DNA of 63,172 bases, filler included, from Octopus bimaculoides (GCF_001194135.2; 8 parts of 7 records of this genome joined end to end with filler, not necessarily neighbours in it); one strand, 5' to 3'; positions 22,001 through 28,000 are shown, counted from the first letter of the whole stretch. Program-made: numbers and translations. The notes: generated by a model not told the origin, from the sequence alone.

Positions 22001-25000
22001 CTCAACAATACTTTGGTCTGCAGGTCCTTTCTTTGCACCCCTTCAGTAGGAGGGTGATATCTGGTCGGTGGTTATGTTGCAAATTTTGGTTGGTAATTAA
22101 ATAAGTACCAGTTGAGCAGTGGGGGTCAATTCATTCAACTAACACCTACCCCCAAATTTCAAGTCTTGTACCTATAGTAGAAAGGACTACTACAACTACT
22201 ACTACACATTTATTTGAGTAGGAATGTGTAAGTTGAATAGGTATTGGACTGACAACCAAGACATTGCCCACTCATGGCTTGTCACTGAGTTTATATTCAC
22301 AAAACATATAACACAATATAGAGAGGACAGGTTGGTATAGTCAGTATACTCACAAACTGAGTGAACAAAAAAGGGGGGGGGGATAATATGATGGAGTACA
22401 AACCCTGATTCTCTCTTGGAAGGCCTCTTTATTCTGAGTGGTCAATGTCTTGATCTGGTCATTGAGATAGTCTACTTCTCTTTGGTCCTCAACACTAAGT
22501 TGGGAAAGCAGATCAGAGCCAAGTTCTTCATTTAGTGACTGAGCTGACCCCTTCATAGCCTCCAGGTTTGTGTGCAAACTGGCAATACTTTTTTCCTACA
22601 AAATAAAAAATAATAACCAATTAATCAATGGAGTTGAATATTTGTACCAATCATTAAGGCAATTTTATCTCTACCAGATGAACATTTATGAACCAACAAG
22701 AAGACTGTTTTACTTTATACGACACTAACAATCTAGCTGCCATGCTACCCAATCAACTACATTTCACATTAAGATTTCAATCCACAGAAACAAGTGAATT
22801 TAGAAACAGCCTTTACTCCAATAATGTACACATTTTGATCCAACAATTGAAAAGCATATTGAAGAAAATTAATGAGGTAAGAGAATGATGGAGAAGAAAG
22901 AGGAAAAATACAGAATAAAGTTTTACTCACTTTTGGTCCTCGAGATTTTTCAATCGCTTGCAATTCTTCTTTCATAAGCCGTACATCTGCACGCATCTTA
23001 TCAAATGTATCTCTGCAAAAGAGAGAAAGCAGAGATTAATGAAGACAGTGAAATAGAAAGACAGATTAGCTGTGAAGAAATAGGGATGAGATAATTCTCT
23101 GTTCTTTTTTTCACTTTTGACTGCAACTATGAGTATTAATTAAAAATTTGTTGTTATTGTATTTTGCCAAAGAAATCTTGATTATTTAGAACACACTTTA
23201 TCTATTTCTTTTATTCCATTTTAACTCCATAAAGACAACAACCACTTTTACAAGAAACAAAGGAGCTATTAATTACAACTTCTGGAAGGCTGTAAGGAGG
23301 CAAAATCATTAGGAGAAAATCCCTTGTAGTATTTGGTCTGGCTCATTACATTCTGAATTCAAGATCAGCTTTGCTTTGTTATCCTAATGGGAGTGCTTTG
23401 TATCAAGGCAAAGGATTAAATCCATTAAAACCCAAATAACTAAAACTACTGGCACATCTGCTGATCAAAAACATTCCCATGGTTTGAAGTGAACACACCT
23501 GCTTAGAAAGTTCTACATGCATGAATGAATTCAAAATGATAACATAACCCTAAATTTAATCAATAAAAAATTCTCCAAAACACTCCACCATTACAACCCA
23601 CCCCACAACCTAATTATCATTCCACTCAAACTCATACACAAGGAAGATTTTTTTAACTTAACAGAGACAATATAAAAGCCAAGATAAACTTCCTTGCACA
23701 ACAGTCCAATGATGGCTTACCAAGCTGAAACTTCAAAGCCACTGTCAATATTCTTTATACACATACACAAGTGTGTGTGAGTTTGTATATATATATATAT
23801 ATATATATATAAATGTATACGCACACACACACACACAAACACTCCACAATCTATAGAGTAAATCGTGAGCTGAATACAGAGCATAATATTAAGGATGATG
23901 AACAAACACTCAGTTCTGGGTGCACTGCATCTTATAGCAGAAACAGTATAAGCTAATGAAGGCGATTAAATGACTCCTGTTCTGTTGTCATTCATGAATT
24001 AATATGTACTCATTTCATGCTTCCTCTAAAGCTTATGTATATTTTGTTCGAACTATTCATTATTGCTCAGTGTGTGCATGCTTGACTAAATCACGTTTTT
24101 CATTTTTCTAATACTAAAGGAATCTTCTAAGGATCAAAAAGATACTCGTGTTTGGTCATTTACAGGAGGTCAAAAATGGTGCACATTTCCTAAGTGATTT
24201 GCCAAATAATTCTCACAAGTCCATACTATGTCTTTACTTTGCAATTGTTATACAAAAATTTGTTTTCCAATAGCATTGGTAAGATTAATAAAAGGCAGAG
24301 CACCTACTTGTTTTTGCTGTTTTTGGTCTCATTCTTCTGCATTTCACTGACAAGGCTGTTAATTTGACTTTCAATCTGTAAATCAAATTAAGGAAAAACA
24401 CACTGACTTTTATTTGCAATTACTGATTCTATAATATACTTCTGTTGTCATCCTTAGTTACTGATCAGCTTGTTTTCCACTACAGAGAATTCAATCTCTA
24501 AAATGAAAACAACTCTTGTTGACTTTCAGTTTTATAGTCAGTTTGACAATCTGATATGGAGTCACACTTCTCCTGGCAGCTCACTATGCAAATGAAAGAT
24601 TTCAAAGTTACAACACAATGGTTGCAATAAAGTACAAACTCACATTTCAAGCATTGTAACATCCAGATCGTATATTACTTACCATCAGGCTGCAATTGTA
24701 GTTATTGCTGTTGTTAATAAAAGTGTTGGTAGATGGTTGGCAATCTGCAAATCCAACACTCCAAATATACTATGCCTTCACACATTTCACACATGCCGTT
24801 TACCCGAACATTTTTCCGAAATCAATTTATACTTAAAACCTCCCCAGACACATAAGCAATGTGCGTAAGGATGTAGGATGTTGCAGTGTTAGGGTATTTG
24901 GGGAGTGATTGTATACATAGTGGCAGCAATTATATGGGTGTGAGAGCTTGCTGACCCTTGCAAAGCCATCTAGTCGGTCATTTTTGGTCATTGTGTAGAT

Positions 25001-28000
25001 AGTCACTAGAAAATAGCCAGCAATTATACTGAGTTGATTATTTTGTCTTCTTTACAGTTTGTTGTAGAAAGATTAGTTGATTGGTTTGAATAAAGGTTAT
25101 GAAACAAGTTATAAGTTGTCTGTTAGTCTTCAGTAAAATATTTGCAGCAATTCCTCTGGCATATTACTAAAAACAATGTTTCCTGGTTGGAAAAGAGATC
25201 ACTGGCTAAAAACTAGCCAGGTAAATGACTAACCCAATGAGAAAATCAGTCTGACATCAAAACAACCATAAATGCAGCTGACAAGAAGAGGAATCATATT
25301 TACAAAGATGGGCTGTGACTACTGAGGATATATGCAAAGGCTTGAAAGAAATGAAGCCAACCTGCTCCACTGGGTGAGTGATGTCAGTGTGCATATATAT
25401 GACAGGGTGTAAGGGATTTGAGGGAAAAACTGGAAGACTGCACTGGTAAAATCATGTGATGTGTATGGATGAGGACAGTTGCATCAAGAAGTGTTGATCT
25501 CTAATTGTGGAGGGAACATGTGAAAGGGATAGACCCAGGAAGACATGGGATGAAGAGGTGAGAAAGAATTTTCAGATGTTGGGCCTCAAATAGGAGATGA
25601 CAAGAGACCGAGGCTTCTAGTGGTTTGCTGTGCTTGAGAAGACATCAAGCTAAGTAAAATTGTGCTTCTCCTTGCATACAGACATGTCCCCTGAATCCCT
25701 CTTCAGCTGAGGAATCCTAATCTAGTGGGCTTGTGAGTGCTGGTGCCATGTAAAAAGCACCTGTGCCATTTAAAGAGCACCCATGCGAGTGCAGTGTAAA
25801 AAGCATCCAGTACACTCTGTAAATTGGTTGGTGTTATCCAGCCATAGAAACCATGCCAAAACAGACAACTGGGGCCCAGGCAGTAGCTGTTCAGCTGACC
25901 CAACTCCTGTCAAACTGTCCAAGAATAGAAAACAGACACTAAATAATGATGATGATGAAGATATAAGGAAAAATTTCATTAAAGCCCATATTACAAAAGA
26001 CAAATCTAAAAGAGTACATGAGCAACACCATTTTAAGAATATAATCATCAAAAGGATATGTTCAAGTTTCTTCTTATGTTCTTTATATTCTTCATTCTGT
26101 GTTTCTACCTTGTTTAGTAACTCACACTTGCTCTTTTGCAGATCGAGACGGGATCTACGGGTGTCGTAGAACCCTCCGGTTAGAGCTCCCCGCCTACTCA
26201 CTTGGTCACCTTTAAAGGAGAAATTAAATAAAAGACAAAAAAAAAAACTGTAGGAATAAACAGAAACAATTCCTTAATGAGGCAACTTATCTACATTGCA
26301 AGACTACATCTTTCAACATCTCAAGTCAGCCTTGAACTATCAGAGCTCTGATCAAAGGCATTCTGGTGGAAACCATCCTGTCTTTATTATTTTTTTCACG
26401 AAAAGCAGATTGTCTAGAATTACATTATTAAAACATGTCCCCTTTTTTCAAAATAATAGATATGATTTGAGGAATATTTGGTAGCTATTTCAAGCAGGGT
26501 GAGCAACCAGATGGTTTTCTTCATTGGTTCATTGGACAGCAAGTTGGTAGAAATGATAACACACCAAACTAAGTGCCTTTCATTCTGAGTTCAAATCCTA
26601 CCAGTTCTTTGACTTTTTTGGATGTAATCTTTGTAGTGTGTTGTGGGGGGACCTTGCATTATGATGAAACACCATTCTCATAGGATTCGCCAAAGCAGGC
26701 CTTTTTGTTCTTCAAAGCAGCATTCAAACACTCTAATTGTTAGCAGCTCAAAGTGGATGACTCCAATGCAATCCTACCGGAGTCCTATCTAGGTTGTCGT
26801 TTAGCCTGTTCTCCACAACTAAAGCACTGCCTGCTTAACTTTTTCATTAGTAGTCACTAAATTGTCCAAAAATACATTCACAAAAGTGAAGAGATGAGCA
26901 GTTGGTTTCTGTTGAGTCATGGTGAACCCATTTTCAGACATTGGGCACCTTTCCAAGATGGTGGTGAACAACTGAATGGCTTGAATTGAGCTTGCTTGCC
27001 AAATCTTCAACTGACACAGCATTAGCCTTCTCAAAATCTAACAAAAGAAACTCATCATCAAATTCAACAGGGTGTTCCATTCATGGCCTCTCTTTTAGGC
27101 TGAAATCACCATTTTTGAACTCTTCCCCATAAACAGAATGGATATTTCAGGTTGCTTCTTCTGCTGCACCGTTTCCCTTTTTGAACTCATGAAGCATTGT
27201 GTGCCTTAAATGCTCTATCAATATGTCCGTCTTTGATGGGGTTAGGGTTAGCAATTAATTTAGATTATTCCTATAAAAAGAAATCACATTAAGTTAAAGC
27301 TTTCCAAGTTCATATGACCATCAATCAATTCCATGTGACATTTTGGAATGTTGTCAAATTGGATAGAAATTACATATTTCAGACATTATTTATGGGATGA
27401 CCTGATATTTGGAGCAAAAAGTCAATCATGTCAAAATGTGAACTCAGAAATGGTGGGAAAAGATTGCATGATTGTGTGGGTGTGCCAAATAAACAAAAAT
27501 GTAATTTTTATACTTGTTTTCAATTGAAATATGTTCAGAATCCACGAAAATGATATCTTAACTCTCTTAGATTATGAAAATAAAGACAAAAGAGCAATAA
27601 AATCATTTGAGCATAAATTCATTTGAGATTCTCATATTGTAGCTGTCAAAAAAAAATGTACAAATGGAGGAAAATTGGCACACAATTTCCATCCTGAACT
27701 AGTTTAAACATCATTTTCTCCTCTCCTTTCTAGGTCATTATCATCATCATCATCTACCTCATCTGAGGCAATAACACAGGAATTCAAGACAGAATGCTCC
27801 TGGGAGCTCCTCTATGCTGATGACCTTGCTCTAATTGCTGAGTCACTATCAGAACTAGAGAAGTTTCAGGTGTGGAAGCAAGGATTAGAATCGAAGGGCC
27901 TTAGAGTCATCCTAGCTAAAATCCAAGTCCTAAAAAGTAGGAAGATAGACAAACCACAAACCCCTTCATGTAGATGGCCCTGCTCAATGTGTAGAAAAGG

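What the first reader, a model, noticed from the sequence alone, without database searches (positions are those of the whole stretch)
24378..26059. U12-type AT-AC minor intron in SMC3
Seen: donor C|ATATCCTTTT, branch TTCCTTAAT with the branch A about 11 nt from the end, and acceptor TTTAC|AG. No GT lies near the exon end, and only the AT-AC solution keeps the SMC3 frame. Established: ATATCCTT and TTCCTTRAY are the U11 and U12 recognition motifs, and AT-AC introns are rare. A GT-AG gene predictor would mis-model this junction, most likely at the tempting TTTACAG acceptor 2 nt downstream. I recall vertebrate SMC3 being listed as a minor-intron gene but cannot confirm it; if correct, the position could be ancestral to bilaterians.
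Basis: partly seen in the sequence, partly recalled or inferred. Interest (0 to 1): 0.75.

Follow-up and report, generated by a model that had tools for sequence, protein, structure and literature searches.

The report
Conserved minor (U12) intron in SMC3
The cohesin gene SMC3 in this window has one rare AT-AC intron that shows the recognition signals of the minor (U12) spliceosome; it sits at the same codon position as the known SMC3 minor intron of vertebrates, so the call is correct but ordinary and matters mainly for gene annotation.

Summary
The window carries the C-terminal 602 codons of SMC3 on the minus strand: 16 exons and 15 introns. Fourteen introns are GT-AG. The intron at 26059..24378 (1682 nt) begins C|ATATCCTTTT, has TTCCTTAAT with its branch A 10-11 nt from the 3' end, and ends TTTAC|AG. 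Joining 26060 to 24377 gives ..[15 protein letters not shown]... This aligns without a gap to a 79%-identical cDNA-derived protein. It also matches species whose genomic exon is uninterrupted here (CTAGAACAGATTGAA).

AT-A(C/T) introns with U12-type donor and branch motifs lie in the same alignment column and phase 1 in seven other loci: a related species, two metagenome invertebrates (for one only the donor end lies on the contig), a spider, lamprey, king cobra and pangolin. Conservation between the window and its relative covers only the donor motif and the branch-site-to-acceptor stretch.

Human SMC3 is already published as a minor-intron gene.

Verdict: supported. This is a positional ortholog of a known, ancient (at least bilaterian) U12 intron, lost in several lineages. 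It is not novel. No RNA evidence from this species was available.

The parts
6931..29839 (-). C-terminal 602 codons of SMC3 (end of hinge domain, second coiled-coil arm, C-terminal ATPase head). It has 16 exons a-p and stop TGA at 6933-6931. Upstream exons lie beyond the piece.
   Evidence: Gene model: in frame with no internal stop. It aligns with a single 1-aa indel to the cDNA-derived protein P0108. Pfam SMC_N, AAA_21 and weak SMC_hinge. Exon a acceptor at 29841-29840; no further SMC3 exon in 29840-31082.
26060..26209 (-). Exon b ([13 protein letters not shown]...KKKLE plus C, the first base of the split Q codon).
   Evidence: The acceptor TTTAAAG| lies upstream. tblastn to P0108.
24378..26059 (-). 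U12-type AT-AC intron, 1682 nt, phase 1.
   Evidence: It is the only non-GT-AG intron of the 15. Orthologous introns are shown.
26050..26059 (-). 5' splice site ATATCCTTTT (U11/U6atac recognition motif).
   Evidence: ATATC-T is invariant across 8 orthologous loci. Nucleotide similarity to relative L003 stops 9 nt into the intron.
24387..24395 (-). Branch-point sequence TTCCTTAAT (U12 recognition motif). The branch A is at 24388 or 24389, 10-11 nt from the 3' end.
   Evidence: T-CTT is invariant across 7 loci, with the rest of the TCCTTRAY-like motif kept in most. Similarity to L003 resumes at 24397, just upstream of this motif.
24378..24380 (-). 3' end of the intron, TAC|. The terminal AC is at 24379-24378.
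   Evidence: The join reproduces CTTGAAC+AGATTGAA, which matches the intronless CTAGAACAGATTGAA of L004.
24308..24377 (-). Exon c (AG of the Q codon, then [22 protein letters not shown] and AA of a K codon). It is followed by the GT-AG donor GTAGGT.
24376..24377 (-). Decoy AG: TTTACAG| would look like a U2-type acceptor 2 nt downstream of the real junction.
   Evidence: With any donor at the true exon end it shifts the frame. It is in frame only with the GT at 26108 or with a 2-nt shifted AT donor.
26107..26108 (-). Nearest upstream GT (AAG|GTAGAA), a possible cryptic U2-type donor. Paired with the decoy AG it removes 51 nt (17 codons) in frame.
   Evidence: The deleted residues [17 protein letters not shown] align with residues present in every ortholog. 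This GT is absent in relative L003.

Best explanation
Window 26059..24378 (minus strand) is a U12-dependent (minor-spliceosome) AT-AC intron of the cohesin gene SMC3. It is the positional ortholog of the known minor intron of vertebrate SMC3.

Mechanism, inferred from established knowledge of U12 splicing:
- U11 snRNA pairs with /ATATCCTT at the donor.
- U12 snRNA pairs with TTCCTTAAT and bulges a branch A 10-11 nt upstream of the AC terminus. The two act together as the U11/U12 di-snRNP.
- U6atac then replaces U11 at the donor, and the intron is excised between C26060|A26059 and C24378|A24377.
- This joins the split codon C|AG (Gln) to give ..KKKLEQIESQ...

Shown here: the motifs, their spacing, the unique fit to the reading frame and to orthologs, and positional conservation across bilaterians. 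Inferred: actual excision by the minor spliceosome in this organism.
For: - Motifs and spacing are present at the exact coordinates.
- The full gene model is in frame only with this intron spliced as AT-AC. The other 14 introns are GT-AG.
- The spliced protein aligns without a gap at the junction to the cDNA-derived P0108 (79% identity).
- It also matches genomic exons of species that lack the intron. L004 reads CTAGAACAGATTGAA = KLEQIE, and Saccoglossus has a continuous exon.
- Orthologous introns lie in the same alignment column and phase 1:
  - L003, a related species: c|ATATCCTTTA..TATCCTTAATAATTTTCAC|ag
  - L001: a|ATATCCTTTC..TTTTCTTAACCATCTTCTTAC|ct, 79 nt
  - L002: donor g|ATATCCTTTG; the contig ends inside the intron
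  - L010, spider: a|ATATCCTTTT..TTCTTAACTGTCCGCAC|at
  - L009, lamprey: c|ATATCCTAGC..GTCCTTGACTGAGTGCCAC|gc
  - L007, cobra, and L006, pangolin: AT-AT ends with ATATCCTT / ATATCTTT donors and TCCTTAGC branch sites 11 nt from the end
- Between the window and L003 the intron is unalignable except for the first 9 nt and the last ~20 nt. That is a selection footprint on exactly the U11 and U12 motifs.
- In L001 and in the amniotes no 2-nt shifted register gives valid termini, which fixes the cleavage before ATATCC.
- Published work reports human SMC3 minor-intron retention when the minor spliceosome is impaired.
Against: - There is no transcript or RNA-seq evidence from this species. The protein database held no same-species product spanning the junction.
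- Whether this genome encodes U11, U12, U4atac and U6atac could not be checked from 31 kb. Rfam found no RNA gene in the window.
- Motif counts in the window are at chance level, so the case rests on position and conservation.
- An in-frame GT-AG alternative and a 2-nt shifted AT-AG register exist in this sequence.
- The human intron's published coordinates were not mapped to the protein directly. Equivalence is inferred through pangolin, whose protein is identical to the human SMC3 sequence as I recall it (my guide) across the 101 residues queried.
Confidence: 0.93

Rival explanations
1. The major (U2-type) spliceosome removes a GT-AG intron from the GT at 26108 (AAG|GTAGAA) to the TTTACAG| acceptor, with the exon resuming at 24375. 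The result is an in-frame SMC3 lacking 17 residues. The ATATCCTT and TTCCTTAAT matches would then be coincidental.
For: The pair is frame-preserving and free of stop codons (first row). The acceptor has a T-rich tract and a proper AG. Cryptic U2-type sites near U12 introns are known to be used when minor splicing fails (general knowledge; cryptic activation is mentioned in the text returned).
Against: The 17 residues it would delete ([17 protein letters not shown]) align with residues present in all orthologs, including cDNA-derived proteins and species with no intron here. The GT is not present in relative L003 (AAG CTT GAC), whereas the U12 motifs are. The donor is weak beyond +3. This reading cannot explain the conservation of ATATCC and TCCTTRAY at the same site in 7 other loci.
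Confidence: 0.03
2. The same intron is cut in a register shifted by 2 nt (AT-AG: CAT|ATCCTT ... TTTACAG|ATT). The product would read ..KKKLE-H-IESQ...
For: The shifted pair is frame-preserving in this window and in L003, because both have AC|AG at the 3' end. AT-AG U12-type introns exist.
Against: U12 donors are cleaved immediately 5' of (A/G)TATCCTT (established knowledge). In L001, spider, lamprey, cobra and pangolin the shifted register gives invalid termini, so only the /ATATCC register works there. The intronless ortholog L004 encodes Q (CAG) at this codon, identical to the C|AG join.
Confidence: 0.02
3. The locus is a non-functional copy or an assembly artefact, so the splice signals are no longer used.
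For: The assembly has N gaps and one artefactual duplication of part of an SMC3 exon (8554-8735 = 8984-9165).
Against: All 16 exons are intact, in frame and end at a proper stop. Identity to orthologs is 57-79% with no frameshift. No gap lies in or near exons b and c or at the intron ends (one search lists the gaps).
Confidence: 0.02

Closest known systems
Human / vertebrate SMC3 minor (U12-type) intron: hg19 chr10:112356309-112357896, 1588 nt. SMC3 is listed as a minor-intron-containing gene in PMC4667643 and PMC7507305, and is grouped with 'A-type' (AT-AN) introns in bioRxiv 10.1101/2020.08.06.239418.
   Same: Same gene. In the vertebrate loci read here (pangolin, cobra, lamprey) the intron lies in the same alignment column and the same phase 1. 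The donor is of the same ATATC(C/T)T type, and the TCCTTRRY-type branch site is 10-11 nt from the 3' end. Intron size is similar: 1.7 kb here against 1.4 kb in pangolin and 1.6 kb in human.
   Different: The window, the invertebrate loci and lamprey end in AC. Pangolin and king cobra end in AT (AT-AT subtype). The split codon is Gln (C|AG) here and Arg (A|GG, A|GA or C|GC) in vertebrates. The human sequence itself was not available, so the link runs through pangolin, whose protein is identical to the human SMC3 sequence as I recall it across the 101 residues queried.
Canonical AT-AC U12-type introns in general (consensus /ATATCCTT donor, TCCTTAAC branch site, short branch-to-3'ss distance)
   Same: Donor 8/8 to consensus. 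The branch site is TTCCTTAAT, which fits TCCTTRAY. The distance is 10-11 nt. It is a single minor intron among many U2-type introns of a housekeeping 'information-processing' gene.
   Different: Nothing unusual. Splicing by U11/U12 was not demonstrated here.
U2-type AT-AC introns (rare introns of the major spliceosome with AT-AC termini)
   Same: The AT-AC terminal dinucleotides.
   Different: U2-type AT-AC introns lack the ATATCCTT donor and the TCCTTAAC branch site close to the 3' end. Both are present and conserved here, so this class does not fit.

Membership tests
U12-type (minor-spliceosome) intron, AT-AC subtype | 5' splice site matching /(A|G)TATCCTT directly at the exon end | tested here: met
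   C|ATATCCTTTT at 26059-26050. ATATC-T is invariant in 8 orthologous loci.
U12-type (minor-spliceosome) intron, AT-AC subtype | Branch-point sequence matching TCCTTRAY | tested here: met
   TTCCTTAAT at 24395-24387. The motif is conserved in 7 loci.
U12-type (minor-spliceosome) intron, AT-AC subtype | Short branch-A to 3' splice-site distance (about 8-21 nt, optimum near 11-13) | tested here: met
   10-11 nt in the window, and 10-12 nt in L003, L001, spider, lamprey, cobra and pangolin.
U12-type (minor-spliceosome) intron, AT-AC subtype | Terminal dinucleotides AT...AC that give the correct reading frame | tested here: met
   The join 26060|24377 keeps all 602 codons in frame and aligns with no indel at the junction.
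U12-type (minor-spliceosome) intron, AT-AC subtype | No strong polypyrimidine tract between branch site and 3' end | tested here: inconclusive
   Only 8-9 nt (TTTGATTT) separate the motif from the terminal AC, so there is no room for a separate tract. The whole region is T-rich, so this says little.
U12-type (minor-spliceosome) intron, AT-AC subtype | Excision that depends on U11/U12/U4atac/U6atac (RNA evidence, or retention when the minor spliceosome is impaired) | not testable with these tools
   No RNA data for this species. Published retention data exist only for human SMC3.
U12-type (minor-spliceosome) intron, AT-AC subtype | The host genome encodes a minor spliceosome | not testable with these tools
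   Only 31 kb is available, and Rfam finds no snRNA in it. Indirect support: the motifs are conserved against a diverged intron in relative L003.
Ortholog of the vertebrate SMC3 minor intron | Same position (alignment column) and phase in orthologous proteins | tested here: met
   Phase 1 in the codon after ..LE / ..IE, and 23 codons plus 2 nt before the end of the ..K(N/F)K motif, in window, L001, spider, lamprey, cobra and pangolin.
Ortholog of the vertebrate SMC3 minor intron | Identity with the intron published for human (chr10:112356309-112357896, hg19) | not tested
   Human genomic sequence is not in the accessible collections. Pangolin has a 1371-nt AT-AT intron here, and its protein is identical to the human sequence as I recall it (my guide) across the 101 residues queried. 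Human intron length 1588 nt comes from the supplement read.
SMC3 (cohesin subunit) | SMC hinge, coiled coil and C-terminal ABC head with LSGGQ signature and Walker B (LFDEID), and best matches named SMC3 | tested here: met
   Pfam SMC_N 7.9e-23; SMC_hinge weak because the domain is cut by the piece edge. [12 protein letters not shown] and [12 protein letters not shown] are present. Named SMC3 hits at 57-67% identity over 100% of the query.

The most novel reading that the evidence does not exclude
The SMC3 minor intron may be older than Bilateria, shared with plants and so close to the last eukaryotic common ancestor. It has been kept as AT-AC in lamprey, spider and this lineage, switched its 3' terminus to AT-AT in amniotes, and was lost independently in several invertebrate lineages (hemichordate, heterobranch gastropods and others). 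Long retention in a dosage-sensitive cohesin gene would fit the idea that slow minor splicing acts as a throttle on cohesin supply. My data establish only the bilaterian age, the AC/AT switch and the losses. The plant link rests on one preprint that names SMC3 among minor-intron genes homologous between human and maize, and that source does not show the intron position.
Probability: 0.3. Interest if true: 0.35.

Novelty: already known. Interest (0 to 1): 0.2.

Why it matters
The practical value is for annotation. A predictor restricted to GT-AG will break or distort SMC3 at this junction, and the public gene models of pangolin, king cobra, a tick and a spider do exactly that. The errors seen are read-through into the intron, skipped exons, and in the spider a gene split in two. 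Flagging the AT-AC junction gives the correct protein (..KKKLEQIESQ..).

Biologically it adds one more lineage to a known pattern: U12 introns are few, sit in essential information-processing genes, and keep their positions for hundreds of millions of years while being lost sporadically. It also gives a small, clean data set for studying subtype switching (AT-AC in invertebrates and lamprey, AT-AT in two amniotes) and intron loss in a gene whose minor-intron retention is implicated in human minor-spliceosome disease. None of this would surprise a specialist.

Tried and rejected
1. Motif over-representation. ATATCCTT and TTCCTTAAY each occur twice in the window, at chance level. Frequency is not the argument; position is.
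2. Exhaustive enumeration of frame-preserving splice pairs within about 70 nt of each end. It yields many formal solutions, including one plausible GT-AG pair and a 2-nt shifted AT-AG pair. I rejected these because they create indels or substitutions against the orthologs and are not conserved.
3. Same-species transcript evidence. Neither protein search returned a same-species product across the junction. The best was a 79%-identical cDNA-derived protein from another species.
4. Taxon identification. The cluster look-up gave no names or accessions.
5. Tick and lobster genomic loci. These were not on record. The tick case rests only on its mis-annotated protein (..KQKLA-DILA-INQVV..). A spider locus (L010) was fetched later and supplied the arthropod evidence.
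6. Rfam scan of the whole window for intron-hosted RNAs or snRNAs: no match.
7. Plant conservation. Papers only state that SMC3 and TTN genes are homologous minor-intron genes in human and maize. The relevant table is an image, so the position could not be checked.
8. ORFs inside the intron. The 143-aa ORF at 25770-26201 is just read-through of exon b into the intron. I did not scan it separately: the Pfam call that included its intron part failed on another entry's coordinates, and the repeat left it out.
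Full report
**What is in the sequence**

The claimed feature lies on the minus strand. Exon b ends ..AAA CTT GAA C at 26060. The next bases are ATATCCTTTT (26059-26050). At the other end the sequence reads GTGTGTTTTTCCTTAATTTGATTTAC|AGATTGAAAGTC. TTCCTTAAT lies at 24395-24387, the last intron base (C) is at 24378, and the exon resumes at 24377. The two A's of the branch motif are 11 and 10 nt from the intron end.

**Gene context**

I rebuilt the gene in the piece using tblastn with guide proteins plus manual splice-site reading.

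- The model has 16 exons (a-p) between 29839 and 6931 on the minus strand.
- They encode 602 residues in one frame, ending at a TGA.
- The product covers the end of the SMC hinge, the second coiled-coil arm and the C-terminal ABC head ([24 protein letters not shown]).
- Pfam finds SMC_N, and a weak SMC_hinge match that is cut off by the piece edge.
- Named database relatives are SMC3 at 57-67% identity over the full query.
- Fourteen of the 15 introns are GT-AG. Only b-c (26059..24378, 1682 nt) is AT-AC.
- The model aligns to P0108 with a single 1-aa indel far from this junction. P0108 is a 79%-identical protein from a 2.9-kb contig, so it derives from cDNA. At the junction the window reads [19 protein letters not shown] and P0108 reads KTKLE-G-LESKINNLVSEMQ.

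**Is it more than chance?**

The motif counts are not. ATATCCTT and TTCCTTAAY each occur twice in 31 kb on both strands, against 1.49 and 0.86 expected. The positions are. One copy starts at exactly the base where the frame requires the exon to end. The other lies 10-11 nt before exactly the base where the frame requires the exon to resume.

I enumerated all frame-preserving, stop-free splice pairs near both ends.

- **GT-AG pair.** GT at 26108 (AAG|GTAGAA) with the TTTACAG| acceptor removes 17 codons in frame.
- **Shifted AT-AG register.** A register moved by 2 nt gives His instead of Gln.

Both fail against comparative data. The 17 residues are present in all orthologs. The GT is absent in the nearest relative. 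The shifted register gives invalid termini in five other species.

**Comparative evidence**

Protein searches returned many ORF-style fragments from genomic contigs of other animals.

*Species without the intron.* Several ORFs start in the upstream intron and run uninterrupted through the junction to ..NSKNK. P0009 is one example..EHKTKLEQIESQMNSLVSE... Its DNA (L004) reads CTAGAACAGATTGAA, the same as the window's joined CTTGAAC+AGATTGAA. These species lack the intron and so validate the junction to the base. Saccoglossus also has a continuous exon. So do ORFs identical to the gastropod Candidula protein in this stretch.

*Species with the intron.* Other ORFs read through into ATATCC, which was the first sign of an orthologous intron. 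DNA was then read for seven loci. The last column gives the number of bases from the branch-motif A to the final intron base.

| Locus | Source | Intron ends | Length | Branch A to 3' end |
|---|---|---|---|---|
| L003 | related species; exons 76-81% identical at DNA level | c\|ATATCCTTTA..TATCCTTAATAATTTTCAC\|ag | 2017 nt | 10-11 nt (read by eye from the printed sequence) |
| L001 | metagenome invertebrate | a\|ATATCCTTTC..TTTTCTTAACCATCTTCTTAC\|ct | 79 nt | 12 nt |
| L002 | metagenome invertebrate | g\|ATATCCTTTG; contig ends inside the intron | not known | not known |
| L010 | araneid spider assembly GCA_013235015.1 | a\|ATATCCTTTT..TTCTTAACTGTCCGCAC\|at | 2541 nt | 10 nt |
| L009 | Lampetra fluviatilis | c\|ATATCCTAGC..GTCCTTGACTGAGTGCCAC\|gc | 446 nt | 11 nt |
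| L007 | Ophiophagus hannah | a\|ATATCCTTCA..ATATCCTTAGCACATCGCAT\|ga | 1162 nt | 11 nt |
| L006 | Smutsia gigantea | a\|ATATCTTTTT..TTTTCCTTAGCCTTGTATAT\|gg | 1371 nt | 11 nt |

In a protein alignment all of these introns fall in the same column (window Q, vertebrate R, L001 T). All are phase 1. DNA alignments of the two intron ends show ATATC-T invariant in 8 loci and the T-CTT core of the branch site invariant in 7.

Between the window and L003 the intron is unalignable. The exceptions are its first 9 nt and the stretch from just upstream of the branch site to the 3' end. That is the footprint expected of selection on U11 and U12 recognition.

The two amniotes end in AT rather than AC (AT-AT subtype). 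Lamprey and all the invertebrates end in AC.

**Literature**

- Human SMC3 is a recognised minor-intron gene. Its minor intron (hg19 chr10:112356309-112357896, 1588 nt) is retained in RNU4ATAC-mutant Roifman syndrome cells (PMC4667643).
- It is listed among minor-intron genes linked to Mendelian disease (PMC7507305).
- It is named among genes with significant 'A-type' (AT-AN) intron retention on CENATAC loss (bioRxiv 10.1101/2020.08.06.239418).
- A preprint on RBM48 names SMC3 and plant TTN genes among minor-intron genes homologous between human and maize. The position in plants could not be checked.

**Annotation consequences**

Public models show this:

- The pangolin protein reads ..RRNIE-NIFLSYTTPCIW-INNEID...
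- The king cobra protein reads ..RRNIE-NILHKLLACLLQ- and then skips exons.
- A tick protein reads ..KQKLA-DILA-INQVV... Its DNA could not be retrieved.
- The spider gene is split into two gene models exactly at this intron.

**Mechanism**

The best-supported reading is a U12-dependent intron. The following steps rest on established knowledge of minor splicing and were not shown here. The U11/U12 di-snRNP recognises the donor and branch site together. U6atac replaces U11 at the donor. The bulged branch A attacks the phosphate before A26059, and the exons join at C26060|A24377.

Not shown here: any RNA evidence from this species, and the presence of minor-spliceosome genes in its genome. The conserved motifs against a diverged intron in L003 argue indirectly that the machinery is present and in use.

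**Novelty and verdict**

This is the ortholog of a documented minor intron in a documented minor-intron gene. Deep positional conservation of U12 introns, sporadic loss, and AT-AC/AT-AT or AT-AC/GT-AG subtype switching are all established themes. The finding is ordinary, and its main use is correct annotation of SMC3. I could not determine the taxon of the window, so the statement about bilaterian ancestry rests on the named spider and vertebrate loci and not on the window itself.

Noticed in passing
L006:12748-14118, L007:14545-15706, L009:18688-19133: The orthologous SMC3 minor intron ends in AT (AT-AT subtype) in pangolin and king cobra. It ends in AC in lamprey, the spider, the window and the other invertebrate loci. 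This suggests a 3'-terminal C-to-T switch somewhere on the line leading to amniotes.
   Followed up: partly
L010:1-22232 (spider assembly GCA_013235015.1); proteins P0164, P0202, P0111: Public gene models break at this intron. The spider SMC3 is split into two genes (ending at 7441 and starting at 10001). The pangolin and cobra models read through into the intron (NIFLS.., NILHK..). A tick model shows DILA in place of the true junction.
   Followed up: yes
L004:789-1043, L005:6001-6249, L008:2507-2785: The intron is absent (continuous exon from GDQVS to NSKNK) in Saccoglossus, in two unnamed invertebrate assemblies, and in ORFs identical to the gastropod Candidula protein across the junction stretch. 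These look like several independent losses.
   Followed up: partly
window 8554-8745 and 8984-9165: A 182-nt stretch that includes part of SMC3 exon n ([28 protein letters not shown]) is duplicated at 99% identity directly next to the N gap at 8736-8745. This is most likely an assembly artefact, and it could add a false exon to gene models.
   Followed up: partly
window 1175-2441 (minus strand): Two overlapping ORFs match the PIF1-like helicase family (PF05970; 1.9e-41 and 5.2e-06). They look like a frameshifted Helitron-type transposon remnant downstream of SMC3.
   Followed up: partly
window 17283-17687, 21103-21398, 30633-30902: Three tandem arrays with periods of 32 nt, 49 nt and 90 nt lie inside SMC3 introns. 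The 49-nt array abuts the donor of exon f (21372). The 32-nt array is interrupted by an N gap (17545-17554).
   Followed up: no
window 9327-9411, 15826-15944, 29148-29293; 25330-25395 and 28459-28524; 19851-19975 and 28194-28318: Copies of interspersed repeats are scattered through SMC3 introns in both orientations (up to 93% identity). One fragment lies inside the U12 intron itself. A PHD-finger-like ORF (27870-28223, below the Pfam cut-off) lies next to one of them and may be retroelement debris.
   Followed up: no
window 3579-6690, 7371-7455 and 23755-23852: There are long (TG)n/(TA)n/(CA)n microsatellite-rich tracts downstream of the gene, inside intron o-p and in intron c-d. They produce many spurious ORFs.
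   Followed up: no
window 26107-26108 with 24376-24377: A cryptic GT (AAG|GTAGAA) and the decoy AG 2 nt past the true acceptor form an in-frame U2-type pair that removes 17 codons. It could be used as a cryptic site if minor splicing were impaired. The GT is not conserved in relative L003.
   Followed up: partly
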